The notes under the pieces were generated by a model that saw only the letters and a program-made list of their open reading frames with translations, ran no database searches and was not told where the DNA came from. A program made the translations under genes and the position numbers. 64,000 nt of DNA from Fimbriosthenelais zetlandica (taxonomy: Eukaryota). Positions 951 through 37,731 of this stretch are shown here, piece by piece (the stretch's first letter is position 1; each line of letters starts with the position of its first letter). The stretch covers positions 4,154,001-4,218,000 of the forward strand of contig OZ365116.1 of the NCBI GenBank assembly GCA_977030845.1. The letters run 5' to 3'.

Positions 951-3900
951 TATAATTGTCTTTTCTATATTTCTTAATAATCTTTACAAGGTTTAAGAGT
1001 CCGTTATTACCTCCCTTGGTTATTTTATTTCAGAATAAGCAAGGTTGCCGATACTTTCTTAAAATAACCTTATATTCTTCAGGACAAACTCCGCTTTTAT
1101 CAAGCACTTGTGAAATCTATACAGCCAGCTTTTTCCTCTCCCAGCTCAGCCAGGAATATGTTGCACCTGTTCATTTCTGGTCCCCTTCAACTCGGGGCAG
1201 GGATCAGTCTCCTATCAACTCCCCTACTTCCCACTTAAAACATCACACTCCCCAGTATCTCAATATTTTCGCATATTTTAATCCCATATATGTTTTTATC
1301 CTTCTGTTAATACGCATCGCAGGCCTCACTGCACCGTGCATTAAGATATTTTATATTACAGAAAGGAAAAGAACAGATGTTTCTTTTCCCAGTGCATCAG
1401 CATTATTCTCAGAAGGTAAAAACATGAAAAAATCATTCTCTGCCTACTTAAAAACAAGTCTTCAACATAGGAGAGAAGACAAAGTGAATGACAGATGGGT
1501 TGTCTTGACATTTTCACTTATCTCTTTAGCGTTCGTCTTACATGGTGTGTCTGTAATTTCTATCTTTTCCCGTTAGTTATGGTTTGTTGATTTAGGCGTG
1601 ACTTTGATCAAAAACCCTTTACACTTTCTAATGGATATCTCCTTCCTCAAAATCCTCATCTGTTTTAATGGATGTGGCTGGCACAGATATTTAAAATGTT
1701 TGATAATTCTGCTGGAATCTCCCCTTTAACTGTTATTTTGTGCAATGGAATATTGTGTTTTCTATTTTCAATTTTATCCTGTGTTGTGCCTATGACATTG
1801 TCTGTCATTGTCAGAATCCTTTCATGTTTGGATCAGGCTCTTCACCCGCTGTAAATTCCTTATTTAATATTATTTTATGAATGTCATCACAAGTCTACAT
1901 TGTCTCTCAGTGTCCAGTAATGAGGAGCTGGCCCTGGCCCGCCATCTGAAGGCTGACATGCACACTGTGCCACTGCCTCGTTTGGTGTTCACTTTCCCGT
2001 TTAGAGGGCGCCTCTGTCCCCTCATGGCTCTCTCCAATCATCGCCCCTCTCCCTCCCCCTCCTACACGTCTCCATCTCCCTTTTCTGAGAGACAGATCTG
2101 CCAAAGATAATATGCAGGAGAAGGAGTTTAAAATGAGCTAAATAATTCCTTTACATTTTTACAAAGGAAGAAGTTGCAGTTGTCCCAATGATGATGAACT
2201 CAGGAGACACAGTTGGATGGATGAGGCAAAAACCTTTGGACCCGAGTTGCCAGTTTGTTTTCCCAAAAGAAACGAAATGATTGATGCAGTGGGAGTTAAA
2301 GAAGGAGATAGGGTGGGAAATTATTACCGCTCCATCCATTGTGAGGGAAAACTGATGGATCTTTCAACGAGATCTTGATTCGTTTACACCATAAATAAAA
2401 CTCCCAATTATTCTTAATTTCATCCTTTGTTATTCTGGAGCATTTCCCAACTGCCTGAGAAATATTCACATAGTTTGTTGCGAGTTTGATCGCTCAATCG
2501 GAGGTGAATATATGTAGTGTATCCTCGCTCTTGTCGAGATGCTAGGGCTGATGTTCTCAGCGATTCTGAGATATGTGGAGGGTTTTTGTCTATGATGGTT
2601 TGATTAGCCCGCTGAGCCAATGACATGAGAACGACTACATGGGGTGGCTTCTGATGGTGTTAGTCCCTCTATTTTTGTTGATTGCTTCTCTTTCTGCTTT
2701 TGATAAGAGTGGGAGAAATAATCGGACCACCTTAGAGATGATGTAGAAGTGGGATAGGAGATGGCTAGAAGTGGGACATGGAAGGGGAGAGAGGGAAAGG
2801 ACGGACCTTACATGTGAAGGAGAGAATGTGAAGGAATAGAGAAAGAGAGGAAGGACGGAGGGGTAGAATCAACGAGAGTAAAATAAATTTAGCTTTATTT
2901 CACTCTCGTTGGTAGAATGAAGAGAGGAATATAAAGAGGAAGAAGGGAAGAAAATAAGAGGGTAGTCTATATTATAAAGTGTGGAAAGGGGAAGAAGTGG
3001 AGGGCTCGTGGGGTTGGGTGAAATGTGAGGGAATGGAGGAGGGATATGGTGTAGTGGATATCACACAGCGGTAGGGTACATAAATTCACAGCAAATGCGT
3101 CATCACCAGAACCTCTGATAATGTTGTTACTAACATCATTTAGTGGAATTTCTATACTCCTGGTCTCGAGGAGGAAAAAGAAATCCCATTTCTTGGGTCA
3201 GGGAGATATCGGTGTAGAGAGGGGGAGATTCCTGACAGCTCCTGATAATGCTGGGTGATGGATATCCTAGACGCCCCTAGATAGCAAGGGGTGGATCCTT
3301 TTTGAAGATTTCTGCCCCAGCCTTGTTTTATAATCACTGATACTGGCCCAAATTTGCCCTAGGTTTTCTGGAAAAAAGCAAAACGTTTTCCACTAAGAAG
3401 ACAGACTCATAGGTCAATCGTCGTTGGTGGTTTGGTGCTTAAAGAGGTCATAAAGATTAGAATAAACAGGGCATAGCTTTGACCTCTCTGGTATGTGGGG
3501 ATTCTTACTGAGGCTTTGTCGGTGATAAAGTATTGTCTCTTATCTATGAGTATAAACACTTAGATGAGCTGGCTTTGGCCAATGAATCTTTACGAATATT
3601 ACATAACTTAGATGGTGAGATATAATCTTGCAAGAATCGTGCAAGACATTTCCATCATATCTCTTAGCGGAATGTTTGTCTACACGATGACATTATATTT
3701 CATTAAGGGTGGTGATTGAAAAAATCATTACACAGACTTAATTCACAAGCTCGCCTCATTCCGAGCTGGCGAGCTCATGAATTTTGAAGCAAGCTGGCAT
3801 GTCACACCAACCTCTACACTAATTCACGTCGACTTGGATCTCATCACCATTCTAGCGAGACTGACAATGGAAAGGCTGAACAGACGGGAGGAGAATTGGA

Positions 3901-17307: not shown

Positions 17308-17314
17308 GTACTAT
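17308..17314. repeat. Left target-site duplication GTACTAT
   Basis: Immediately precedes the left TIR and is identical to 24233-24239. P-superfamily elements make 7-8 bp TSDs. Confidence 0.9.
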
Positions 17315-17350
17315 CAAAGATTCTACTATATAAAGATGTCCGACTCGCGC
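17315..17350 (+). repeat. Left terminal inverted repeat (36 bp)
   Basis: CAAAGATTCTACTATATAAAGATGTCCGACTCGCGC is the exact reverse complement of 24197-24232. Confidence 0.97.
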
Positions 17351-17388
17351 GCGCGCGGTGTTATGCGCGCTGCAGTGGCGCCCTCCTA

Positions 17389-17407
17389 CGGCGGCTCTCC
17401 TTAACTA
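17389..17407 (+). repeat. Left internal (subterminal) inverted repeat, 19 bp
   Basis: CGGCGGCTCTCCTTAACTA is the exact reverse complement of 24130-24148. Confidence 0.92.
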
Positions 17408-17425
17408 ACGTTGTCCGCTAGCATC

Positions 17426-20400
17426 ATGGCCGCGAGCAGGTCACATTGGGCCGGGAGCGGTGGGTTTTGTGCAGCCGCGAACTGTAACAACTCCAGGAAA
17501 TGGAATGGAGAACTTCACTTTTTCCGCTTCCCTAAAGACCCTCAAAGGTATGTAAGGCTAAATGAAATTAGAACAAAGCCTTTTTTTGTGTCCATCTGAC
17601 GTTTTGAAAATGACCTTGTTGAGGCTATGTGAGCGATAATAGGCCTGGATAGACCAAGGCTCTAGATTTGAACTTGTATTAATTTTCTGTATTCTAAAAC
17701 CTTAGACATAGATGTCAGAATTGACATTAATAAAAGTATTGGTATTTATAGCTCAGTCTGGTCTGACCTAGATCTAGAGGTGTGACTATGTCCATCTAAA
17801 ATAATCAGAAAAGCCGTAAAAAAAAAAAAAACACAATGACCAATCTGATTTGGTGACGGTGGGCCAAGCTTAGCCTAAGTACCGGTAAAAAGATTCATGA
17901 GCATGGACCCCTGAACCGTGACTGGGGTCCCCTTCCCTAGATCTATGTAAATGAAACAGGTCTATCAACAATATGACATTACATTTATTGAGGCATTTCT
18001 TGAATTTTATTTATATTCTTAGATGTAAAACGTGGGTGAACAACCTTCGACGGGAGGACCTTCGAGACAAGACAGCTGAGCAGCTATACAAGAATGCCTG
18101 TGTATGTCAAGAGCATTTCGAAGACGTAATGTTCATGAATGTTGCCAAGAAGAATAGCCTGGTATGTTGAAAGCTTATATAGTTTGATTTTATAGAAAAA
18201 AAGGCACAATAGTTAGGCCTACATTCTTCTACTCATTGTCAAACTATGTGCGAAAATTAAGATGTTTAATCATCTGGACAATGTCAAATAATCTTTTTTT
18301 TCTCTTTGATTGGAAGGTCCCACTTGCTGTTCCTACATTCGTGAGTGTGACAAACCCGCCTCCACGGGTGAGCAGTAAGAGACCACCACCAAAGATGCGT
18401 GAAGTTCCCCCAAGAAAGAAGCAGGTGATTGACAGGGATGAACACCAGGGTACGTAGCTAATTAAATTATAGCTAACAGCAGGGCGTGAAGAGTTGGTAA
18501 ACATTGACTAGAGTGAAATGTAGTCCAGGCTTTAATTTTCCTAGCTTGAAATTAGAGATTATAATATTGAAAAATCCTTGAATTGGTAAAGTGTGTGATT
18601 TAAAAAAAAAATTACTGCACCCCTTTAGACCCCGGCAGTACTTCGGGATTGACAACAGAGCCAGGTGTACACCATAGTACAGGAGAAGAGACCCCGTCCA
18701 TTGAACAGCTAGGTGTGTATTAATTATAATTAGTCATCAAAATCGCGATAGTCTGGTGAACCATATTATTACCGTATTTAAAATGAATAGCATGGTTTTT
18801 TTCTGACTTTCTAATGACGTTTGATAGACTTCATCATTACTTTAGTCTGTGTAAAATTTTGACCCACATAATATAATTAAATTAAAATTAAAAACAATCG
18901 TATAAATAAACCAATTTCAGAACAAAAGATTTTTAAGCTACAGCGTAAAGTTCAAAAATTACGCATGCAGGTGCTTATACTTATAGTATCTTGGTGCTAT
19001 TTTTTAACAGATTTGTTCACTTTTATTTCCTATTTTATTGTCAGTTGAATGTTGTTATTCACTTTGCATAATGCGCCAGTCAATGTGTCGTACCTGGGGA
19101 TTCAGTCTAGAGTATATAATATCAGCTTAATGGGTTGGGGGTGTCGGGGGGGGGGGGGGGGGGGGGGGGGGGTAGGTAGGGGCATTGCACATTGAGTGGT
19201 GCATTACTTGAGGTTTTTTCGATTTTTACTTGTTAACTTTTATATGCTAGATCTATAATGCTGTATGCTACTCAATTATATTCACAGATTATTCTTAATT
19301 ATTCTTAAAAATATAGGATTATTTGCCATAAAATTACAACAATTAACCGAAAGTTAATTGTTTTCTAACCAGATCTCATAGATTAAAATAAGCTTCTTTG
19401 TGGGGAATTTGTAAGTATTATATATTATGACTAATATACAATCATATACTTATGTCATATTTAAAATGGAATTTAAGGCTCGTCGCTGGAAAGAGAAGGC
19501 CAAGAAGACCCAGGTACCACGGGCAACTCGTGTCAGCAAGAGGGCTGAGAAAGCAAGACAACTCCTTGAGCTGCGCACAAACCTCTCCAAGCATCTCACA
19601 GCTTCCCAAGTCCAGTTTGTCATGAGCCAGGTGCGTCAAGGTGGCAAGTCTTCACGAGGCCGGCGATGGACAGAGGAGGAAAAGACATTAGCCTTATCAC
19701 TCCTTCATTCAAGTCCAAAGACATACAAACTACTTCGTAAAATGTTTGCTCTTCCATCTCTTTCTACCTTGCGCAACATAGTTTCAAAGGTCGACATAAT
19801 GCCTGGTTTCAGCAAGAACATTTTGGAAGCATTGAGACTGAAGGTGCAGAATCTTCCACCAAATGAGAAGCTTGTCAGTTTAGTTATGGACGAGATGACC
19901 ATAAGACAAGCTATCACATATGACAAACATCATGATGCCATCGAAGGGTTTGTCCACACCACAGAGCGTGGTGAAGAAGTGGCTAGCCACGTTTTAGTGT
20001 TCATGGTAAGGGGCCTTCTTACGAAGTGGAAAACACCCATAGGCTATTTCCTCTCCGGTGGAACTATGAAGTCATCAGTTATGAAGGATCTCATGCTCCA
20101 GGCTATTGATGAAGTACATGCTGTTGGCCTGACCGTGACCGTGGTGGTGTCTGATCAGGGATCAAACAATGTCTCCATGTTCGAGACAAAGCTTGGTGTT
20201 GGTGTTAGTCAACCCTTCTTCATCCATCATGATTCCAAGGTGTTTGTCATGTATGATCCGCCGCACCTCATTAAGTCCATACGAAATAACTTGAAAAATC
20301 ATGGATATGAGGTTGATGGCCATGACATCAAGTGGGAGCACCTCAAGGAATTCTACATAAAGGACTCTGAAAAGGCTGTTCGTCTAGCACCACGACTGAC

Positions 20401-22154
20401 AAGCAAGCACCTAGATCTCCCTCCCTTCTCTCCACTAAGGGTGAAACTTGCGACACAGGTACTGAGTCACTCTGTGGCAGCTGGTATGACAGCCATGGCT
20501 AACTGGCAAGTTATTTCAGGTAGGAGTTAAATTGTATTTTCTCAGATTAGATTACACACTGGTTATTTCGAACGCTGTAATTTATTTCAACCACTTTAGT
20601 AATATTTCAAATTTTCCCCAGAGAATCAGATCATAGGGCAGTGTGGAAACGTAAATAATATTTACTAGATCCTCACTTTATATCTCTTAATCTAGAAATT
20701 TTAATAATATTGGATTTTTCTTTGCAGCAAATTGCATGTACACTGCAGCATTTTGCGAGGAGATGGACCAACTGTTCAACACGTTTAACAGCGCCTCACT
20801 GACCAGCACTGCTCGCATGAGGCATGCCATGTCTAACACCTCGGGCCACGTGGAATTCCTGAAGGCTAAGCTAACATGGATCGCAGGATTTAAATCCAAA
20901 GGTATTATTGTAGCAAATTACTAATCCTATATGGACTACATTCAATAAATACTGCATATTTGCACTCCCCGTATTTGGCCGGTCATGCAAATATGCACTA
21001 CCGGCAAGAAAGGGTTAAATAAGTACATCTATGTTACATTATGACATCATCTAACCTTTATTTTTTTCATTTATTTAGGTTCCCGTGCCCCTGCTTGTTT
21101 CCGGGGTTGGCAGATTTCAATCTCTGCAGTGCTGCAGCTTTGGGAGAAGTTGAACGTCAATCATGGGGTAAAGTTCCTGATGACAAATCGTCTTAACCAA
21201 GATTGCTTAGAAAATCTGTTCTCCATTATACGGTCTAAGGGAGCACAACGGGACAACCCCGACGCAAGAGAATTCCGAGCAGCTCTTCGACAGGTAGGCC
21301 TAGATGTTATAATGTTATCACACAATATTTGTTTAAATTGTTAAATCCTTTCGGGAATACAAAAGAAATCCTTTTAAAACTTATAGTGTTTGCGATTTAA
21401 AAAAATGAAATATTGTATTTTCTGACTTGGACATAATTGTATTAAATTAATTCAGTTATTAATCTCATTGAAACAGGTGATGGTCGACTCCATCATGACT
21501 CCTGTGACCAATGCAAATTGTCAGGAAGACGTTGACAAATTTCTGGTCAACCTGTCTACGCCACACCCTGTAGACCCATCACCACTTATTGAACCTGTCC
21601 CCGAATGTCCGTCTAACATTAGCCATGTACCAGAAGGTGTGCGTTCATTGCTGACGGTAGCAAACTTCACCGCGCTTGATGCTGTGGAGGAACTTGACCA
21701 CCAGGAAGACAATGTCATCACTTACATTGGTGGTTACATCATCAAAAAGCTGAAACCCGTGATCTGTGGCTATTGTGTTAGTTCCCTGTCAACAGTGATA
21801 GATCCAGAAGAGCCTACCCACGAGTTCCTCAAGGAAAAAAACTACATTGGTGCTACAACTGGACTCACTGCTCCCTCCACTTCCCTGACCAATGTACTTC
21901 AAACCATGGAGACTGAATACAGAAAGGTTATTGTAGCAAACATTTATCAATATGGTGTCCTGAACAATATCGTGAATGCTTTGAGTAAATCAGTGGATAT
22001 GGTAGGAATAACCTGTGAAACGTGTGGTGTTGAAAAGGCAGTGGTACGTTTATTTGTTACAATTAGGCTTCATCACACACTCAAGGAAAGTAATCGGGAA
22101 CTCAGTCAGGGGAAACGGAAGAACCGTAAAATGTTGAAATTAACGCATAAGTAA
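17426..22154 (+). CDS. P-element (THAP9-like) transposase, 9 predicted exons, 878 aa
   Basis: Hand-spliced exons: 17426-17547, 18023-18161, 18317-18449, 18629-18712, 18921-18970, 19478-20519, 20728-20901, 21079-21293, 21477-22154. All introns are GT..AG, phases are compatible, and the total is 2637 nt with no internal stop. THAP C2CH motif: FCAAANC..FFRFP..W..CQEHF..L-VPLAVPT. Short coiled coil: EQKIFKLQRKVQKLRMQ. Catalytic-core motifs: LVMDEM, VVSDQGSNN, YDPPHLIKSIRNN, LRVKLATQVLS, RLNQDCLENLFSIIR. C-terminal YIGGYIIKK..CGYC..CETC. Confidence 0.9.
19146..19172 (+). repeat. Poly-G tract (~27 G) in transposase intron 5
   Basis: Homopolymer read directly; the exact length is unreliable in assemblies. 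Confidence 0.85.
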
Positions 22155-22221
22155 TGTTCATTCTGAAAAGTATTCACATTCCGAGACATAAGCGTGTTAG
22201 CTGTTCTGATTAATTTTTCTG

Positions 22222-22384
22222 ATTTATTCATGTCTCAGGTGAATGTGGGAGGTATCCTGATCCTTGCCCTGCCTGGGGCATGGATCTATATCTGTAAAAA
22301 AAACTTTGATTTCAATCCAAAAATTAATTATTTATTCATATCTCAGGTGAATGTGGGAGGTACCCTTATCCTTGCCCTTCCTGG
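22222..22384 (+). repeat. 55-bp direct duplication (offset 108 bp) just 3' of the transposase stop
   Basis: 22222-22276 and 22330-22384 differ at 4 positions; each copy contains TTTATTCAT.TCTCAG|GTG. Confidence 0.9.
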
Positions 22385-23373
22385 ACATTTTAGTATCATT
22401 GTTGTAAATAAGCTTTGTACATGATGGGAAAGAAAGTACGTATGTATAAAAAAAGAAAGTGGTCGGTTCAATCAAGTACATGTAATTGCATTGTGACGTG
22501 TAGCATATATATTATGCAGGAGGAGATGTATATATAGCCTTGACATCTAATAGCTGTTACAGAAGCTCAGCTGGGTATTATTTTTGTAATTGATGTAATT
22601 CATGTATTATTATGGTAACAACTTTAGTGTCTTGAGATATACATGATCCAGATAATTTTGATTTGTCAATTATGTAACTGTGCTTTGCCATGCATTCGGT
22701 AGAGCAACAGTGACTTGAATACACCACCTTGTACTAGTGGCTTGTACCTGGCTCTCTTATTATGTCATAGGCCAATATGGCATCTTTGGTTTAATGGATT
22801 AATGTAAATAATTTTCCGGATAAGATCAATGTAAAGAAAAAAATCAAGCCTGCTCACTTTCCAGAAACTGCAGGGTCTATATGTATTTTAGCTCCTCTGA
22901 TTCATGATGAGGTAGTGGTTATGTTCGACTACAGTACTAATTTGTTACCGTAACATAACCATAAAATACCAATAATAAAAAACACTTTTTCCAGTATGCA
23001 GTATTTGTTTTTTTGACTTCATAGGTATAGGATCAAGGATCGTCAACAATTAAGTCAAGAAAATATGATGAGACCTTCTGTTCGAAACAACAAGCTTCAC
23101 ATTTATTCCCTTAATTCTATCCTATCTCAAGGAAGTGTTAATGGTGAATTTATGCTAGAAAAATAAAAAGGAAAAATAGGCCTATACTGCTATAGACAGA
23201 AAAGTGGGAAATTATTTAATCAGGGGTAACTTTGTTATGAGTCAATAGCCACCTGACAATAGGCCTACATATACTTCTCTTGGGGTTACCGGTAGCCCTA
23301 CCATACCCGGTACTTCATTGGGATATCGTGAGGGGGCGAATTTGCTATTTGTGACTGTCTCAGATGATCAGAT

Positions 23374-23672
23374 CCCACCAAAAATTGTACCGTAGGACTT
23401 GGGCTATATTCCATAATTTAGGCTTAGCCTTAGGGCCCAGGCTTAAGCCTAACCTACCCTACCGTTAGACAGAATATTCATCTCTACCCAAAATTGTACC
23501 GTGGGGCTAGGCCTCGGAGAGTAGGCCTGTATATTCCATAATTTAAAGTCTACGCCAAAACCAATATAGGCTATATTTCATGATTTAGGCCTATGCCTAG
23601 GATTACATATTCCATAATTTAGGCGTAGGCCTAGGCTTAGGGCGTAGGCCCAGGCCTAACCTAGGCTAACCT
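23374..23672. repeat. Degenerate AGGCCT/TAGGCCTA-rich tandem array inside the P element 3' region
   Basis: Repeated modules AAAATTGTACCGT (x2) and ATATTCCATAATTTA (3 exact copies plus 1 variant), interleaved with AGGCCT/AGGCTT palindromic motifs. Confidence 0.75.
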
Positions 23673-24129
23673 GCTCCACCCCGCTGGAACAGTAAGTGAG
23701 TAAGTGTCAGATTACAGATACCGGTAGGTCTACTCTAGGCCTAAACCGATTTGGTGGTTGACTGGGCCCTCCCAAACATGAAATATGAAATTGATAAATA
23801 TCGAAATCTACCATAGGGAAAGAAACATACAATAATATTTCCTGATACAATGTATGTGGATGCTTTTCAGCCCCAAACTCTCTCTCAAGTAGCGACCTAT
23901 TCGCCAATTGGGCATATTATCGCCCATTCTAAACCCCGGCTATAAATGGCTAAATCTTCCATTTAAAATAGCTTTTAGTCTCAATCATATTATTTTCCAC
24001 AAGAGCAGCTTATTTATGCCTTATAGTCATCTAATTTATTACAAGTTTCCTGCTCTTTTGCTCTACTGGTCATCAGAAAATGCTGTTGAAAGCGTCAATA
24101 GCGACCAATGCTCGGGCCTATTTCTGACC

Positions 24130-24148
24130 TAGTTAAGGAGAGCCGCCG
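24130..24148 (-). repeat. Right internal inverted repeat, 19 bp
   Basis: TAGTTAAGGAGAGCCGCCG is the reverse complement of 17389-17407. Confidence 0.92.
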
Positions 24149-24196
24149 CATGGAGCGCAGCGGTCGCGACGATAACACTCGCGTCAGTGGGCGCGG

Positions 24197-24232
24197 GCGC
24201 GAGTCGGACATCTTTATATAGTAGAATCTTTG
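24197..24232 (-). repeat. Right terminal inverted repeat (36 bp)
   Basis: GCGCGAGTCGGACATCTTTATATAGTAGAATCTTTG. Confidence 0.97.
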
Positions 24233-24239
24233 GTACTAT
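24233..24239. repeat. Right target-site duplication GTACTAT
   Basis: Immediately follows the right TIR and is identical to 17308-17314. Confidence 0.9.
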
Positions 24240-32159: not shown

Positions 32160-35159
32160 TTAGAAAAAAAACATGTCTTTCAGGTATTTTAGGAATTTAT
32201 GTCTACAGGTTATTAGGTGTGCTGTTGTAACTGAGCTATTCCACCTTGACACTGCTTTAGTAATAAAACTATTTTCAAATTGTGCCGAATTAGGTCTCTT
32301 CGCTTTAAGTTGACGCCGGCCAACAGAAAAGTTCCTTGTTGTTAAATTTCTACTGTCCAAGTTATATTCTTTTGAAGCAAGTCTATGTGCGTAGCTTAGA
32401 AGGTGCATTTCTCTCCTACTTGAGAGATTAAGTATGTGCAAAGTTTTATGCCCCTTAATAATGTCTGGGTATTTGCCCTCTCTCAAGATTGTTTTTATTG
32501 CCCAGTTTTGTATTCGCTGTAATTTATGTAACATCATTTTTGGTGCAGAGTCATAAAAAATATCGCCGTAATCTAAAAGGGGGAGAATCATAACTTTATA
32601 TATATTTAATGCTGTTCTTTTTGTTAGCGCTCCCCTGACTCTGGACAATTGTTTTACCCGCAATGAGGCCATCTGTACTGTTTTAGCAATATGCGACTTG
32701 AATGACAACGTGTGGTCCAGGACAACTCCTAAATATCTATATTCATTTACATTTTCAAGGTCTGTGTTATTTACTTTAAATGGTAACATAGATGTGGGGG
32801 ACATAACAGACCTAGCATTTCCATACGCAACTGATTTTGTTTTACCAATGTTAACAGAGAGCTTGTTCTTTCTGGTCCAGAGCATGAAAATATCTAGTGA
32901 GTTTTGCAGTCTGTCATGCAATGCGCTTGGACAGATATCAGCATCAAAAAGTACAGTGTCATCAGCAAATAGAGCAAATTTAGATGAGTGTAGATATTTT
33001 TGTAAGTCGTTGATATAAATATTAAACAGGAGCGGACCCAAGGTGCTTCCCTGCGGAACACCGCAAGATAAAGGTGCTAAATCGGAACATTTTCCATGAA
33101 GGTTCACATAGTGAGATCTGTTTGATATATAGCTTCTGAACCATTGTAAGACATTCTCAGATATATTAAGATCAGCCATTTTGTTCATTAAGATACTGTG
33201 GTCTATTGTATCGAATGCTTTAGCTAGGTCGACATAAATAGCCCGACACTTTTTCTTCATATTAAGGTTTTCATAAATGTATTTTAAAACAAAACCAATG
33301 GCTTGTTCAGTAGAACGCCCATGTCTGAATCCGAACTGTTGTTCTGCTAAGAGTTCCTCAGATTCGAGGTATGACATTAGCTGTTTATGCACTGCTTTCT
33401 CTAATATTTTGGCAGGGAGTTTGATACACGAGATTGGTCGGAAATTTTTCGGCTCTTTTTTGCTCCCAGATTTATAAATTGGAGTGATCCTGGTTGTTTT
33501 CCAAGATTTAGGGAATTGATTCTTTTCTATGGATAAGTTTAGAAGATTTAGAAGTTTATGGATTAAAATACGGAAGGCTGATTTTAAAATCCTAGTTGGG
33601 AGTCCATCAAGACCAGAACTTTTATATGGGTTAATATTTGAAATTATCTGCCGGACATCTTTTTCTTCAATATTATGAAATTGAAACTTCTGACCCCTTT
33701 CCCTATCAGCAATATTTAGGGTTTCACAAGGTATGCCATTTTGGGCATTATCATCCTGGAGTAAAGAATCTATTAAAATTTGTTGTTCATTGGGTGACAA
33801 AGGAGGGACTTGGCTAGCTAACTTCAAACCGACATTAGAATAATGGAGGTTAAAAACGTTTGGTGGATCAACAATACTAGGGTCATATTCTGACGGTTCT
33901 AAGTTATACACCACATCCTCATTCAGGTTCTTTTTGTTCAATAAATTATTAATTTTATCCCAAAATTCATGCGGGCTCTTTGAATTATTCTCAATGTCAT
34001 CAGAGATGAAATTATCTTTTTTAAATCTACATAACCTATTTACTTTATGTTTCATGGCTCTCGCCACTTCCCAATCAGTAGTTGATCTTGATTTCTTTGC
34101 TACCATGTATAATCTATCTTTTTCCCGTATAAGTGTCATTAATTCAGGGTCCACCCACTCAGATTTTTTTGGCAGATTTGAGAATGTTTTTATGGGACAA
34201 ATTAAATCTAATGCTTTTCGTATTTTTCCTTCCATTATTACCCAGCGGTCCTCAGGGCTACCAGAGCTATCAAAATCATCCCAATTATCAGTTAGCAGTA
34301 AATCCCTGAATTTTTCCTCATCAAAGAACCTTAGTTGTCTGCATTTAAAGGTAGTTCTCTCTTTTTGTACTGGTTTTTTCTTGAATATACAGAAGATTGG
34401 GCTATGATCACTAATGTTGGTGTTTATAACACCTGAACATCTCACTTTAGAGGAGGAGGTGTAAATATGATCTATTATGGAAGATGATTTCTGGGTTGTC
34501 CTCGTGGGTACGGATATTAATTGTTCTAGATTACAGCAGGAAGCGAGGTCTAGTATTTTTTTCTTTGGCATAGATTTGTCTTTTGCTATATCAATATTAA
34601 AATCCCCTAACATAGTGATGTCCCCTATATCATTTGTAGATATCAGAGCGTCACTCATGGCTGAAAGAGCCTGGTCCAAATTCCCGTCTGGGGGCCTATA
34701 TACATTAAATATTTTGAAGGATTTTATATACTTAGCTCTGAATATTAGGGTTTGCATTTCAAGTGATTTGTGTACAACACCATCTACGGGCTGGAAGGGT
34801 ATATTATCCACTATAAAACCATCTTTATAATATGTGAGAAGGCCACCACCTTTCTTTTTGCCCCTTACTCTATCATTTCTGATGAATTTATAACCTGGAA
34901 TAGCTAGGCTTCTACTGCTAATAACACCAGTCAACCAAGTTTCCTGCAAACATAGGATATCAGGATTTGTGTCTGCGATAAATACCTCTAATTCAGCCTT
35001 TTTAGGCAATACACTACGTATATTCAGACTTATTAACTTAATACCTTTGATTAAGACAACATCCTTAGTCTCAAGAAAACCAGTATTATACTTATCCCAA
35101 TTATGCATAGGGTCTCCATTACGCCCAGTATGATGGTTACTTCCCATTCTATTATCCAT
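32160..35159 (-). CDS. LINE ORF2: apurinic endonuclease + reverse transcriptase (999 aa, intact, no RNase H seen)
   Basis: APE motifs: SLNIRS, ILCLQETWL, GGGLLTY, VYRPP, LGDFNID, PTR..SSIIDHIY, ISDHSPI. RT motifs: KSSGLDG, WKTTRITPIYKSG, NFRPIS, QFGFRHGRST, VDLAKAFDTIDH, GVPQGSTLGPLLFNIYIND, LFADD, KTK, YLGVVLD. CR1-group C-terminus: LLDYGD..LQRIQN..SF...WNS. Confidence 0.97.
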   Translation of the reverse strand: MDNRMGSNHHTGRNGDPMHNWDKYNTGFLETKDVVLIKGIKLISLNIRSVLPKKAELEVFIADTNPDILCLQETWLTGVISSRSLAIPGYKFIRNDRVRGKKKGGGLLTYYKDGFIVDNIPFQPVDGVVHKSLEMQTLIFRAKYIKSFKIFNVYRPPDGNLDQALSAMSDALISTNDIGDITMLGDFNIDIAKDKSMPKKKILDLASCCNLEQLISVPTRTTQKSSSIIDHIYTSSSKVRCSGVINTNISDHSPIFCIFKKKPVQKERTTFKCRQLRFFDEEKFRDLLLTDNWDDFDSSGSPEDRWVIMEGKIRKALDLICPIKTFSNLPKKSEWVDPELMTLIREKDRLYMVAKKSRSTTDWEVARAMKHKVNRLCRFKKDNFISDDIENNSKSPHEFWDKINNLLNKKNLNEDVVYNLEPSEYDPSIVDPPNVFNLHYSNVGLKLASQVPPLSPNEQQILIDSLLQDDNAQNGIPCETLNIADRERGQKFQFHNIEEKDVRQIISNINPYKSSGLDGLPTRILKSAFRILIHKLLNLLNLSIEKNQFPKSWKTTRITPIYKSGSKKEPKNFRPISCIKLPAKILEKAVHKQLMSYLESEELLAEQQFGFRHGRSTEQAIGFVLKYIYENLNMKKKCRAIYVDLAKAFDTIDHSILMNKMADLNISENVLQWFRSYISNRSHYVNLHGKCSDLAPLSCGVPQGSTLGPLLFNIYINDLQKYLHSSKFALFADDTVLFDADICPSALHDRLQNSLDIFMLWTRKNKLSVNIGKTKSVAYGNARSVMSPTSMLPFKVNNTDLENVNEYRYLGVVLDHTLSFKSHIAKTVQMASLRVKQLSRVRGALTKRTALNIYKVMILPLLDYGDIFYDSAPKMMLHKLQRIQNWAIKTILREGKYPDIIKGHKTLHILNLSSRREMHLLSYAHRLASKEYNLDSRNLTTRNFSVGRRQLKAKRPNSAQFENSFITKAVSRWNSSVTTAHLITCRHKFLKYLKDMFFF

Positions 35160-35710
35160 TGTTTCTATTATCAGTTCCTATCACACTATCATTCATACCG
35201 AAGAGTATCAGAACATTTATACATAGCATAAGTTCTTTCATCTTATGCATATAAGCAATATTATGACAGATGTTAGATTCCATAAAAGTCCTTTGGAGTT
35301 CTAAATTTTAAAGCTTAAACCCAAAGCCAAAAGCCAATCAAGCCCTGTGGTTACAACTATTACTTGAATTCTACATTTTAGACTTAAACCCGATCGATCT
35401 CTGTGATTCGATCCCTTTTCATTTTGACTATACACGCAAATTATATTCTTTATAGTTAGTATAGGAGATGAATTAATGTCAACTTGATCTGTTCGAGTGA
35501 ATACTTCATACTTCAGCGATGACGCATCATGAGCTCAATCCTGTAGTAATATCACAGTACAGTAAATTGAAATACAAACATCATAACACAGAATAGTCCT
35601 GGAAGTAGCACCATCCATGGAGTGAAGATCAGGGTAACGGTAGCATCAGGTAATTAATACATGTGAATGTGGTAAGTCTTTTTTGTAGTGCACACTTCAT
35701 ACGTGACGCA

Positions 35711-36972
35711 TCATGTTCTAAATCCAGTAGTAATAGCACAATACACTAACTTCAAATACAAAGCTTAATGTATTGGTGCGTTTATGACCTTTCATACAGT
35801 TATGATAAGGTATAATATATATATATGATGTATGATGAGTGAGAAGATCGTTCATGTTCTAAATCCAGTAGTAATAGCACAATACACTAACTTCAAATAC
35901 AAAGCTTAATGTATTGGTGCGTTTATGACCTTTCATACAGTTATGATAAGGCATAATATATATATATATGATGTATGATGAGTGAGAAGATCGTTCATGT
36001 TCTAAATCCAGTAGTAATAGCACAATACACTAACTTCAAATACAAAGCTTAATGTATTGGTGCGTTTACGACCTTTCATACAGTTATGATAAGGTATAAT
36101 ATATGATGTATGATGAGTGAGAAGATCGTTCATGTTCTAAATCCAGTAGTAATAGCACAATACACTAACTTCAAATACAAAGCTTAATGTATTAGTGCGT
36201 TTATGACCTTTCATACAGTTATGATAAGGTATAATATATATATATGATGTATGATGAGTGAGAAGATCGTTCATGTTCTAAATCCAGTAGTAATAGCACA
36301 ATACACTAACTTCAAATACAAAGCTTAATGTATTGGTGCGTTTATGACCTTTCATACAGTTATGATAAGGCATAATATATATATATATGATGTATGATGA
36401 GTGAGAAGATCGTTCATGTTCTAAATCCAGTAGTAATAGCACAATACACTAACTTCAAATACAAAGCTTAATGTATTGGTGCGTTTATGACCTTTCATAC
36501 AGTTATGATAAGGCATAATATATGATGTATGATGAGTGAGAAGATCGTTCATGTTCTAAATCCAGTAGTAATAGCACAATACACTAACTTCAAATACAAA
36601 GCTTAATGTATTAGTGCGTTTATGACCTTTCATACAGTTATGATAAGGTATAATATATATATATGATGTATGATGAGTGAGAAGATCGTTCATGTTCTAA
36701 ATCCAGTAGTAATAGCACAATACACTAACTTCAAATACAAAGCTTAATGTATTGGTGCGTTTATGACCTTTCATACAGTTATGATAAGGCATAATATATA
36801 TATATATGATGTATGATGAGTGAGAAGATCGTTCATGTTCTAAATCCAGTAGTAATAGCACAATACACTAACTTCAAATACAAAGCTTAATGTATTGGTG
36901 CGTTTATGACCTTTCATACAGTTATGATAAGGCATAATATATGATGTATGATGAGTGAGAAGATCGTTCATG
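35711..36972. repeat. Minisatellite of 9 units (141/143/135 bp) forming a 3 x 419-bp higher-order repeat in the LINE inter-ORF spacer
   Basis: Unit starts (TCATGTTCTAAATCC) at 35711, 35852, 35995, 36130, 36271, 36414, 36549, 36690 and 36833, ending at 36967. Length differences come from an internal TA run of 11, 13 or 5 nt. There is one HindIII site (AAGCTT) per unit. Confidence 0.97.
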
Positions 36973-37008
36973 GTAGGCTATAATTATGATGAGTGATAAG
37001 GGCTTAGT

Positions 37009-37731
37009 CTATGTGAATATTTTACGAAGGGAGGATTTTATCTGTAACACCCATTCTCTACGGAGCGCTTCAGAGAGATGGCACCCGTCGGAGGCCAGTC
37101 GCCAATAGTCATTAGACTTATGTTTGTGGGAGTTCCGGTGGACTGATCGGGCTAACCAGGGGGTTGGATTACCTGTAGTTGCGTTGGAATTTATAAGTTT
37201 CCTATTAAAGGTGGCTAAGCATCTATTGAACATCGTTTGTGATCTATCTTGTTCTTGTTTTTGTTCTGCGTGTAAGTTCCTTTTTTCCAGCCGGTGATTC
37301 CTCCGCCAGACACACTCAAATTTGTACATGTCCATCCCTGTTATTTGAGAAAAAATTAGCTTTGGTTTGTAACTATCACTAAGAGATGCTATGAATTGCT
37401 GGCAGTTTTGAGTTATGTCAGTGGCTCCACTAGCTGCCTCCTCTAATGTGCTGTAATTGGGTGATATTATTCCCTGTCTCCTGTCTAGCGTAGTCAAGTC
37501 ACATAAACCTGCGGCCAGTATGATTATAGAAGGTTCATGTTTAAGAATATATTGTTTGGATTTATTGAGACAGGCCAACATGCCTGCTCCTTTATGTGTC
37601 AACACTTTTATGTCGCCTATATTGGCCCTATCGAAGAGAACCTGCAGGCCTGCACCCCTGGAGTCACACATAATAAGAACCGTTTCTTGCTCGGGTAATG
37701 TAAATTGGTCAGTCGCCGTTGCCATCGTCAT
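37009..37731 (-). CDS. LINE ORF1: SGNH/GDSL esterase-like protein (240 aa)
   Basis: Block I VLIMCDSR (Ser nucleophile), block II HKGAG, block III IIILAAGLCDL and block V LASDGCHLS (DxxH). It lies upstream of, and on the same strand as, ORF2. Esterase ORF1s are known from CR1/L2-group LINEs. Confidence 0.85.
   Translation of the reverse strand: MTMATATDQFTLPEQETVLIMCDSRGAGLQVLFDRANIGDIKVLTHKGAGMLACLNKSKQYILKHEPSIIILAAGLCDLTTLDRRQGIISPNYSTLEEAASGATDITQNCQQFIASLSDSYKPKLIFSQITGMDMYKFECVWRRNHRLEKRNLHAEQKQEQDRSQTMFNRCLATFNRKLINSNATTGNPTPWLARSVHRNSHKHKSNDYWRLASDGCHLSEALRREWVLQIKSSLRKIFT

What the first reader, a model, noticed from the sequence alone, without database searches (positions are those of the whole stretch)
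17315..24232. Intact, intron-rich (9-exon) P-superfamily transposon that looks recently mobile
Seen: perfect 36-bp TIRs, an unmutated 7-bp TSD, and eight GT-AG introns that splice into an open 878-codon ORF. The ORF keeps the THAP C2CH residues and the three acidic catalytic positions (DEM, SDQG, DCLENLF). CpGs are retained at both ends, whereas the flanks look decayed. Known: the Drosophila P element has 3 introns, and vertebrate THAP9 is a domesticated gene without TIRs. Inference: this is a candidate active, non-drosophilid animal P family with an unusually fragmented gene. Two tiny exons (84 and 50 nt) encode the linker and coiled coil.
Basis: partly seen in the sequence, partly recalled or inferred. 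Interest (0 to 1): 0.7.

Follow-up and report, generated by a model that had tools for sequence, protein, structure and literature searches.

The report
Young nine-exon P-element transposon
This is a complete, very young copy of a P-element-type jumping gene in an invertebrate genome, with an open nine-exon transposase gene and an identical twin on another chromosome, so it moved recently; it is a new family of a well-known kind, not a new kind of element.

Summary
Window 17315-24232 is a 6,918-bp element with perfect 36-bp terminal inverted repeats. It is flanked by a 7-bp duplication (GTACTAT). Nine GT-AG exons give an open frame of 878 codons.

Scanned exon by exon, the product has the full P-transposase architecture: THAP, coiled coil, HTH, an RNase H domain split by the GTP-binding insertion domain, and a C-terminal domain. 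D314, D402 and E626 align with D230, D303 and E531 of the Drosophila enzyme.

The genome (447 Mb) holds only eight copies with ends. Each paired copy has its own 7-bp duplication. One copy on another contig matches the window copy at every base except the length of a poly-G run. No MITEs were found.

No sequencing run was listed, so splicing is not shown by RNA. Comparison supports all eight introns. Relatives from marine metagenomes share introns 1 and 4-8, including the 50-nt exon. Uninterrupted homologues, one in this same genome, run across introns 2, 3 and 6-8 without a gap.

Verdict: a recently mobile, apparently autonomous P-superfamily family. It is a new member of a known kind. Present-day activity is unproven.

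The parts
17308..17314 (.). left copy of the 7-bp target-site duplication GTACTAT
17315..17350 (+). 5' terminal inverted repeat, 36 bp perfect; holds a TATA-like TATATAAA at 17327-17334
17389..17407 (+). 5' inner (subterminal) inverted repeat, 19 nt, 75-93 nt from the end
17426..17547 (+). exon 1 (122 nt): start codon and first part of the THAP zinc finger (C15, C20)
18023..18161 (+). exon 2 (139 nt): THAP continued (C69, H72)
18317..18449 (+). exon 3 (133 nt): AVPT motif at the end of THAP, then a basic proline-rich linker
18629..18712 (+). exon 4 (84 nt): acidic/Ser-Thr linker; the least conserved exon
18921..18970 (+). exon 5 (50 nt): start of the heptad (coiled-coil) segment; same length, phase and splice sites in L031
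19146..19172 (+). poly-G run (27 G) in intron 5; its length differs between copies
19478..20519 (+). exon 6 (1042 nt): coiled coil, HTH, RNase H N-terminal half (D314, D402) and most of the GTP-binding insertion domain
20728..20901 (+). exon 7 (174 nt): end of the GTP-binding insertion domain
21079..21293 (+). exon 8 (215 nt): RNase H C-terminal part with D623 and E626
21477..22154 (+). exon 9 (675 nt plus TAA): C-terminal domain
22155..24129 (+). about 2 kb of non-coding 3' part, present in all full-length copies; no Pfam or Rfam match; AATAAA at 22974 and 23162
24130..24148 (-). 3' inner inverted repeat, 85-103 nt from the end (10 nt further in than at the 5' end)
24197..24232 (-). 3' terminal inverted repeat, 36 bp perfect
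24233..24239 (.). right copy of the 7-bp target-site duplication GTACTAT

Best explanation
This is a full-length, apparently autonomous DNA transposon of the P superfamily that inserted here very recently by cut-and-paste transposition.

Shown: its nine-exon gene can encode an 878-residue P-type transposase. The domain order is THAP zinc finger, heptad coiled coil, HTH, an RNase H catalytic domain split by the GTP-binding insertion domain, and a C-terminal domain. The acidic triad is intact.

Inferred, by analogy with Drosophila P transposase: the THAP domain binds sites inside the roughly 100-bp imperfect inverted ends. The 19-nt inner repeat, set 10 nt further in at the 3' end, is the best candidate site. 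The protein then pairs the two ends as an oligomer, excises the element with GTP as cofactor, and inserts it with a 7-bp stagger. The observed target pattern is nTnnnAn. The promoter must lie in the first 111 nt, and the TATATAAA inside the terminal repeat is a candidate TATA box.
For: Structure: 36-bp perfect terminal repeats, a 7-bp duplication and an open 878-codon frame over nine GT-AG exons.

Domains, exon by exon: THAP (exons 1 and 2), Tnp_P_element HTH plus TNP-like RNaseH_N (E = 7.6e-37) plus GBD (exon 6), GBD tail (exon 7), RNaseH_C (exon 8) and Tnp_P_element_C (exon 9). Exons 6 and 8 match Drosophila P transposase 6p5a (E = 2e-25 and 2e-7). D314, D402 and E626 lie on D230, D303 and E531 (PMC7776569).

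Mobility: there are eight 5' ends and eight 3' ends in the 447-Mb genome. Six copies have perfect 7-bp duplications, each different. A seventh matches at 6 of 7 bases. Copy L002, on another contig, differs only by two extra G in a poly-G run over 6,918 bp. The flanks are unique. In the nine target sites, position 2 is T in 8 of 9 and position 6 is A in 9 of 9. This resembles Galileo's GTANTAC (PMC4168063).

Introns: L031 (73% aa identity) shares introns 4-8 in position and phase, including the 50-nt exon, while its introns are unalignable. L033 shares intron 1 and reads straight through junction 2. L031 reads through junction 3. The uninterrupted homologues P0014 and P0060, and a same-genome paralogue L034, cross junctions 6-8 with no indel.

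Selection: in older copies, introns diverge more than exons and third codon positions more than first and second (L007, L016).
Against: There is no RNA evidence. No sequencing run was listed, so transcription, the eight splices and the transcript ends are all unobserved. Exon 4 has only weak comparative support, because the linker is divergent. Other in-frame donor choices in exon 3 exist.

No insertion polymorphism or empty-site allele could be tested. Copy number is low (eight), and four of the eight are interrupted, deleted or truncated. One of the four full-length copies has a frameshift at codon 581. Nothing shows that the protein is made or active today. The roughly 2-kb 3' part has no assigned role.
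Confidence: 0.85

Rival explanations
1. The family jumped recently but is now silent or non-autonomous. The window copy only looks intact. Its real transcript may differ from the model in the unverified part (exons 3-5), or the host may silence it. Any movement would then depend on transposase from elsewhere.
For: No RNA data could be obtained. Copy number is low and there are no MITE offspring. Half of the copies are damaged. The genome holds at least 113 matches to the P-type RNase H domain from other families, which could in principle act in trans.
Against: Two copies match at every base apart from a poly-G length. Three of the four full-length copies have open frames. The catalytic and zinc-binding residues are intact. 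Exon-biased conservation in older copies points to selection on the protein.
Confidence: 0.25
2. It is a domesticated THAP9-like host gene, not a transposon.
For: THAP9 genes share the whole P-transposase architecture and have introns (PMC7776569).
Against: It has perfect terminal repeats, a target-site duplication, and eight dispersed copies in unrelated unique flanks, each with its own duplication.
Confidence: 0.01
3. The identical second copy is a segmental duplication or an assembly duplicate, not a transposition.
For: 100% identity over 6.9 kb is also what a collapsed or duplicated assembly region would give.
Against: Identity ends exactly at the terminal repeats. The two copies have different 7-bp duplications (GTACTAT and CTTTCAC in element orientation). 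The window's flanks occur once in the genome.
Confidence: 0.02

Closest known systems
Drosophila melanogaster P element (canonical P; transposase structure 6P5A/6PE2)
   Same: Same six-domain transposase order and the same catalytic D, D, E. Terminal repeats plus inner inverted repeats with unequal spacing at the two ends (PMC7776569). The transposase gene starts about 100 nt from the 5' end.
   Different: Terminal repeats of 36 bp, not 31. A 7-bp duplication, not 8 bp. Eight introns, not three. A length of 6.9 kb against 2.9 kb. Detectable sequence similarity is limited to the catalytic part (E = 2e-25), and the host is not an insect.
Galileo and 1360 (Hoppel), P superfamily of Drosophila
   Same: A 7-bp target-site duplication and a palindromic target with T at position 2 and A at position 6 (GTANTAC in Galileo; PMC4168063, PMC3698922; here).
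   Different: Those elements have no introns (PMC3698922). Galileo has very long terminal repeats. Here the repeats are short and the gene has nine exons.
P element of the Drosophila repleta group (D. buzzatii), seven exons
   Same: An intron-rich P transposase gene in a mobile element. The introns lie at positions unrelated to those of D. melanogaster (PMC3698922).
   Different: That element has six introns confirmed by RT-PCR, 3-bp terminal repeats, 8-9-bp duplications and an abundant MITE (BuT5). Here there are eight introns (comparative support only), 36-bp repeats, 7-bp duplications and no MITE.
Zebrafish Pdre2 / zfTHAP9 and human THAP9
   Same: Homologous over the whole transposase. Pdre has terminal and subterminal inverted repeats (PMC10983969, PMC7776569).
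   Different: Human THAP9 is a single domesticated gene without ends. Pdre has 13-bp terminal repeats and 8-bp duplications. zfTHAP9 excised but did not integrate in assays (PMC10983969). The present family has left fresh integrations with duplications.
Unnamed relatives on marine metagenome contigs (L031 from ERZ23498486; L032/L033 from ERZ25084518)
   Same: 56-73% amino-acid identity exon by exon. Introns 1 and 4-8 are at the same codons and phases, including the 50-nt exon.
   Different: Intron 3 is absent in L031 and intron 2 is absent in L033. The linker is diverged. The ends of these relatives were not recovered, so their terminal repeats and duplications are unknown.

Membership tests
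P superfamily of DNA transposons | Transposase with an N-terminal THAP (C2CH) zinc finger | tested here: met
   Pfam THAP matches exon 1 (profile positions 1-30) and exon 2 (29-62). C15, C20, C69, H72 and AVPT are present.
P superfamily of DNA transposons | RNase H-like catalytic domain split by the P-type (GTP-binding) insertion domain | tested here: met
   PF21787 (E = 7.6e-37) and PF21788 in exon 6, the PF21788 tail in exon 7 and PF21789 in exon 8. Exons 6 and 8 match 6p5a.
P superfamily of DNA transposons | Catalytic acidic triad equivalent to D230, D303 and E531 of Drosophila transposase | tested here: met
   D314, D402 and E626 align with them. Residue roles come from PMC7776569.
P superfamily of DNA transposons | Terminal inverted repeats with subterminal inverted repeats | tested here: met
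   36-bp perfect terminal repeats and a 19-nt inner inverted repeat, both also seen in the diverged copies L007 and L018 with 1-2 substitutions in each.
P superfamily of DNA transposons | Target-site duplication of 7-8 bp (up to 9 bp) | tested here: met
   Six perfect and one 6-of-7 paired 7-bp duplications. The 7-bp length is known for Galileo and 1360 (PMC3698922).
P superfamily of DNA transposons | GTP used as cofactor; cleavage leaving long 3' extensions | not testable with these tools
   Only the presence of the GBD fold family is shown. GTP binding and cleavage chemistry need biochemistry.
Autonomous, currently active element | Transcribed and spliced into the predicted mRNA | not testable with these tools
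   No sequencing run was listed, so read laying could not be used. Support is comparative only.
Autonomous, currently active element | Insertion polymorphism or very young insertions | tested here: inconclusive
   A copy matching at every base except a poly-G length sits at a second locus, and further copies have about 99% aligned identity or more. These show recent insertion. Polymorphism itself could not be tested, and no empty-site haplotig is present.
Domesticated THAP9 gene | Single-copy host gene without transposon ends | tested here: not met
   Terminal repeats, duplications and eight dispersed copies.

The most novel reading that the evidence does not exclude
The family is alive today in a lophotrochozoan host. 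Other agents' unchecked notes call the host an annelid worm. If so, its cDNA plus about 250-bp ends could give a P-type transposase outside Drosophila that does the whole reaction, both excision and integration with 7-bp duplications. In the papers I read, human THAP9 moved only Drosophila P elements and zfTHAP9 excised but did not integrate. A second point: its eight introns are old. Six are shared with relatives of 56-73% identity from other organisms, among them a 50-nt micro-exon that sets the frame. Splicing may therefore be a built-in control of transposase supply, as intron 3 is in Drosophila.
Probability: 0.35. Interest if true: 0.55.

Novelty: new member of a known kind. Interest (0 to 1): 0.35.

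Why it matters
P elements are among the best-studied eukaryotic transposons, but mechanistic knowledge rests on the Drosophila enzyme. Human THAP9 was shown only to move Drosophila P elements. Zebrafish THAP9 excised but did not integrate in assays (PMC7776569, PMC10983969).

A natural element from a distant animal phylum with open frames in three copies, perfect ends and fresh integrations is a ready candidate for comparative biochemistry. Questions it could address include 7-bp versus 8-bp stagger, GTP use, and end pairing with offset inner repeats. It might also serve as a new gene-transfer tool.

It also shows that intron positions in a transposase gene can be kept across hosts while an intron-poor P family lives in the same genome. 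That bears on how transposon genes gain and keep introns. None of this changes the classification: it is an ordinary, well-preserved member of a known superfamily.

Tried and rejected

2. MITE derivatives. Searches with both ends found only the eight known copies, plus four internal or subterminal fragments that lack the terminal repeat.

3. Empty-site allele or haplotig. Both 400-bp flanks occur once in the assembly.

4. Same family elsewhere. An exact scan of metagenome contigs with the first 30 nt of the terminal repeat found nothing. The nearest protein relatives have 73-75% identity and are unnamed.

5. A second gene or RNA in the 2-kb 3' part. There was no Pfam hit in its ORFs, no Rfam family and only a small 34-nt tandem repeat. 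The region is element-specific, not a nested high-copy repeat.

6. An apparent exon-specific divergence of the C29 copy turned out to be several internal deletions, not substitutions.

7. Steps not done. The joined 878-residue product was never assembled or sent to any tool. All searches were made exon by exon, by reference. So there was no whole-protein search, fold or tree. The large representative-protein search was not used, because the family scans already settle what the protein is. Repbase and Dfam are not available here. The host's identity was not tested.
Full report
**What is there**

Window 17315-24232 is a 6,918-bp element without any N. Its ends are inverted repeats that are perfect for 36 bp (CAAAGATTCT...CTCGCGC). 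With one mismatch they run on to about 42 bp. Directly outside lie two copies of GTACTAT, at 17308-17314 and 24233-24239.

Further in, both ends share GTGTTAT and a perfect 19-nt inverted repeat (17389-17407 / 24130-24148). The 3' end carries an extra 11 nt between the terminal repeat and these motifs. The inner repeat therefore sits 75-93 nt from the 5' end but 85-103 nt from the 3' end. This is the layout known from P elements: terminal repeats, inner inverted repeats, and unequal spacing at the two ends (PMC7776569).

**The gene**

The check covered the phase of each exon, stops within each exon, and the split codons at each junction. The exons are:

- exon 1: 17426-17547
- exon 2: 18023-18161
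- exon 3: 18317-18449
- exon 4: 18629-18712 (84 nt)
- exon 5: 18921-18970 (50 nt)
- exon 6: 19478-20519
- exon 7: 20728-20901
- exon 8: 21079-21293
- exon 9: 21477-22154

All eight introns (155-507 nt) are GT-AG. No exon has an in-frame stop. The total is 878 codons plus TAA.

Every search was made exon by exon, by reference.

Pfam finds the following:

- THAP in exon 1 (profile positions 1-30) and exon 2 (29-62)
- the P-element HTH, TNP-like RNase H N-terminal domain (E = 7.6e-37) and GTP-binding insertion domain (profile 2-80) in exon 6
- the tail of that insertion domain (profile 88-114) in exon 7
- the RNase H C-terminal piece in exon 8
- the P-element C-terminal domain in exon 9, just under its cut-off

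This is the six-domain order of Drosophila P transposase (PMC7776569).

Exons 6 and 8 match the solved Drosophila enzyme 6p5a (E = 2e-25 and 2e-7). The D of VMDEMT falls on D230, the D of VVSDQG on D303, and the D and E of QDCLENLF on D528 and E531. In the model's numbering these are D314, D402, D623 and E626. The THAP ligands are C15, C20, C69 and H72, with AVPT at 91-94. Exon 5 and the start of exon 6 carry hydrophobic residues in a 3-4 heptad rhythm at the place of the P leucine zipper. This is my reading of the sequence and was not tested.

**Are the introns real?**

No sequencing run was listed for this element, so there is no RNA evidence and read laying could not be used. The comparative evidence is good.

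- **L031**, a marine metagenome contig, carries a relative with 73% amino-acid identity in exon 6. Similarity is confined to the predicted exons and stops at the predicted splice sites.
  - Introns 4, 5, 6, 7 and 8 are at the same codons and phases, with GT and AG in place. The intron sequences themselves cannot be aligned.
  - The 50-nt exon 5 is again exactly 50 nt, with 10 of 17 residues identical.
  - Exons 3 and 4 form one continuous frame that ends in the same ...EL-G donor. So intron 3 is simply absent there.
- **L033**, from another assembly (56% identity), has intron 1 at the same codon and phase and reads straight through junction 2.
- **Uninterrupted homologues** P0014 and P0060 align to exons 6, 7, 8 and 9 with no residue missing or added at the junctions.
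- **L034**, a different P family in this same genome, has its catalytic half in one 755-residue open frame. It also crosses junctions 6, 7 and 8 with no indel.
- **Older copies in this genome** show selection on the coding parts. In L007, introns have diverged by 7.6%, against 3.1, 3.4 and 5.5% at codon positions 1, 2 and 3. In L016 the figures are 9.6% against 2.3, 2.3 and 4.4%.

The weakest part is exon 4, a poorly conserved linker. An alternative donor in exon 3 (after ...AVPTF) would also keep the frame if spliced directly to exon 6. Exon 3's later residues are conserved in L031, L033 and a Priapulus protein, which favours the model as given.

**Mobility**

The 447-Mb assembly holds only eight 5' ends and eight 3' ends of this family.

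- Four copies are full length: the window copy, L002, L003 and L004.
- Three further copies have both ends but are interrupted or internally deleted.
- The remaining 5' end and 3' end belong to two truncated copies on different contigs.

In element orientation the duplications are:

- GTACTAT (window)
- CTTTCAC (L002)
- GTAATAT (L003)
- AGTTGAT (L004)
- CTGACAT (the C11 copy)
- GTCATAT (the C29 copy)
- ATAGTAC / ATAGTAG (the C1 copy at 11.48 Mb)

The one-ended copies show GTAGCAC and CTCTTAG. All are 7 bp. Position 2 is T in 8 of 9 and position 6 is A in 9 of 9. This gives a palindromic nTnnnAn that recalls the GTANTAC target of Galileo. Galileo and 1360 are the P-superfamily members that make 7-bp duplications (PMC4168063, PMC3698922).

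L002, on another contig, differs from the window copy only by two extra G in the poly-G run of intron 5, over all 6,918 bp. The window's flanks are unique in the assembly. This is therefore transposition, not segmental duplication.

Zero substitutions in 6.9 kb puts the 95% upper bound on divergence at about 4e-4 per site. With an assumed 1e-9 to 1e-8 substitutions per site per generation, that is at most about 2e4 to 2e5 generations. This is my inference and the rates are assumed.

L003 and L004 each differ from the window copy by a few dozen substitutions and short indels over the 6.9 kb. L003 has a 1-bp deletion at codon 581 and a 12-bp duplication in its right terminal repeat. L004 has four amino-acid changes and stays open. 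There are no short non-autonomous (MITE) derivatives.

**The CpG argument**

CpG observed/expected is 1.18 and 1.32 in the terminal ~200 bp, against 0.46 for the window and 0.45-0.58 for the flanks. But the interior of the element is as depleted as the flanks (0.38-0.71). The contrast reflects the CG-rich ends, possibly a promoter or binding region, rather than youth. Youth is shown by copy identity.

**How it most likely works**

Shown: architecture, catalytic residues, ends, duplications and fresh copies.

Inferred from the Drosophila mechanism (PMC7776569):

- The THAP domain recognises sites in the subterminal region.
- The coiled coil and the flexible linker let an oligomer pair two ends with different spacing.
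- The RNase H domain, with GTP in the insertion domain, cuts and joins the DNA.
- Integration is staggered by 7 bp.

The start codon is 111 nt from the 5' end, so the promoter must overlap the end. TATATAAA inside the terminal repeat (17327) is a candidate TATA box. Its mirror image at 24213 would point inward from the 3' end. The 2.08-kb 3' part is kept in all full-length copies but matches no protein or RNA family. Its role is unknown.

**Comparison with what is known, and novelty**

P-like elements are documented in Diptera, Trichomonas, Ciona and zebrafish. THAP9 is their domesticated vertebrate descendant (PMC3698922, PMC7776569, PMC10983969).

Intron numbers differ between families. D. 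melanogaster P has three and D. buzzatii P has six, which its authors called 'quite unusual'. Galileo and 1360 have none (PMC3698922). Eight introns is the largest number among those I could read about, and the positions are shared with relatives in other organisms. It is a difference of degree.

The genome also carries at least 113 matches to the P-type RNase H domain from several other families, some in identical copies with long open frames. P elements are thus a normal, diverse part of this genome's mobilome.

Other agents' notes call the host an annelid worm. I did not test that. The nearest named protein relatives are from Priapulus and a sea slug, at 44-54% identity.

I could not compare the element with Repbase or Dfam. 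The paper searches I ran found no description of this family.

**Verdict**

This is a well-preserved, recently mobile, apparently autonomous P-superfamily element: a new member of a known kind. Present-day activity and the splicing pattern remain to be shown by experiment.

Noticed in passing
window 19146-19172: A run of 27 G in intron 5 is the only difference between the two otherwise identical copies (+2 G in L002). It is 6 G shorter in L003 and 11 G shorter in L004. Relatives on metagenome contig L032 also carry long poly-G/poly-C runs.
   Followed up: partly
window 20605-20701 (intron 6): A stretch of about 97 nt has many dispersed matches of 84-90% identity on other contigs (element coordinates 3291-3387). 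It is probably a short interspersed repeat nested in the intron. Two truncated copies (C19 and C21) break at element coordinates 3277 and 3279, right beside it.
   Followed up: no
window 22215-22285: A unit of about 70 nt, present twice in the element's 3' part, also occurs as a tandem array of roughly 100-bp period at G000:C13:23320290-23320555 and singly elsewhere.
   Followed up: no
G000:C29:14632516, C29:15719163, C31:35370 (L034 = C29:14628500-14637500): Another P-type family in the same genome has equal-scoring copies with a 704-755-residue uninterrupted frame. The frame covers HTH to C-terminus, and only the THAP part is split (two introns). In all, at least 113 matches to the P-type RNase H domain were found in the genome.
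   Followed up: partly
window 17327-17334 and 24213-24220: The terminal repeat contains TATATAAA. Because the repeat is inverted, both ends could in principle start inward transcription. Transcription from the 3' end would be antisense to the transposase gene.
   Followed up: no
G000:C11:32301519-32318988 (L008, L009, L015): One copy of the family is split by an insertion of about 10.8 kb whose borders overlap by 8 nt of element sequence (2747-2754). That overlap is presumably the duplication made by another transposon. The copy also lacks 228 bp of the 3' part.
   Followed up: no
window 32160-37731, minus strand: A LINE with a 999-residue ORF (endonuclease plus reverse transcriptase) and an upstream 240-residue ORF without a Pfam match. 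It is the subject of another note of this scan.
   Followed up: no
L033:10791-11472: In the 56%-identical relative, the exon 9 equivalent is in two frames (residues 1-67 and 73-224). That copy is therefore probably frameshifted or has an extra tiny intron.
   Followed up: no
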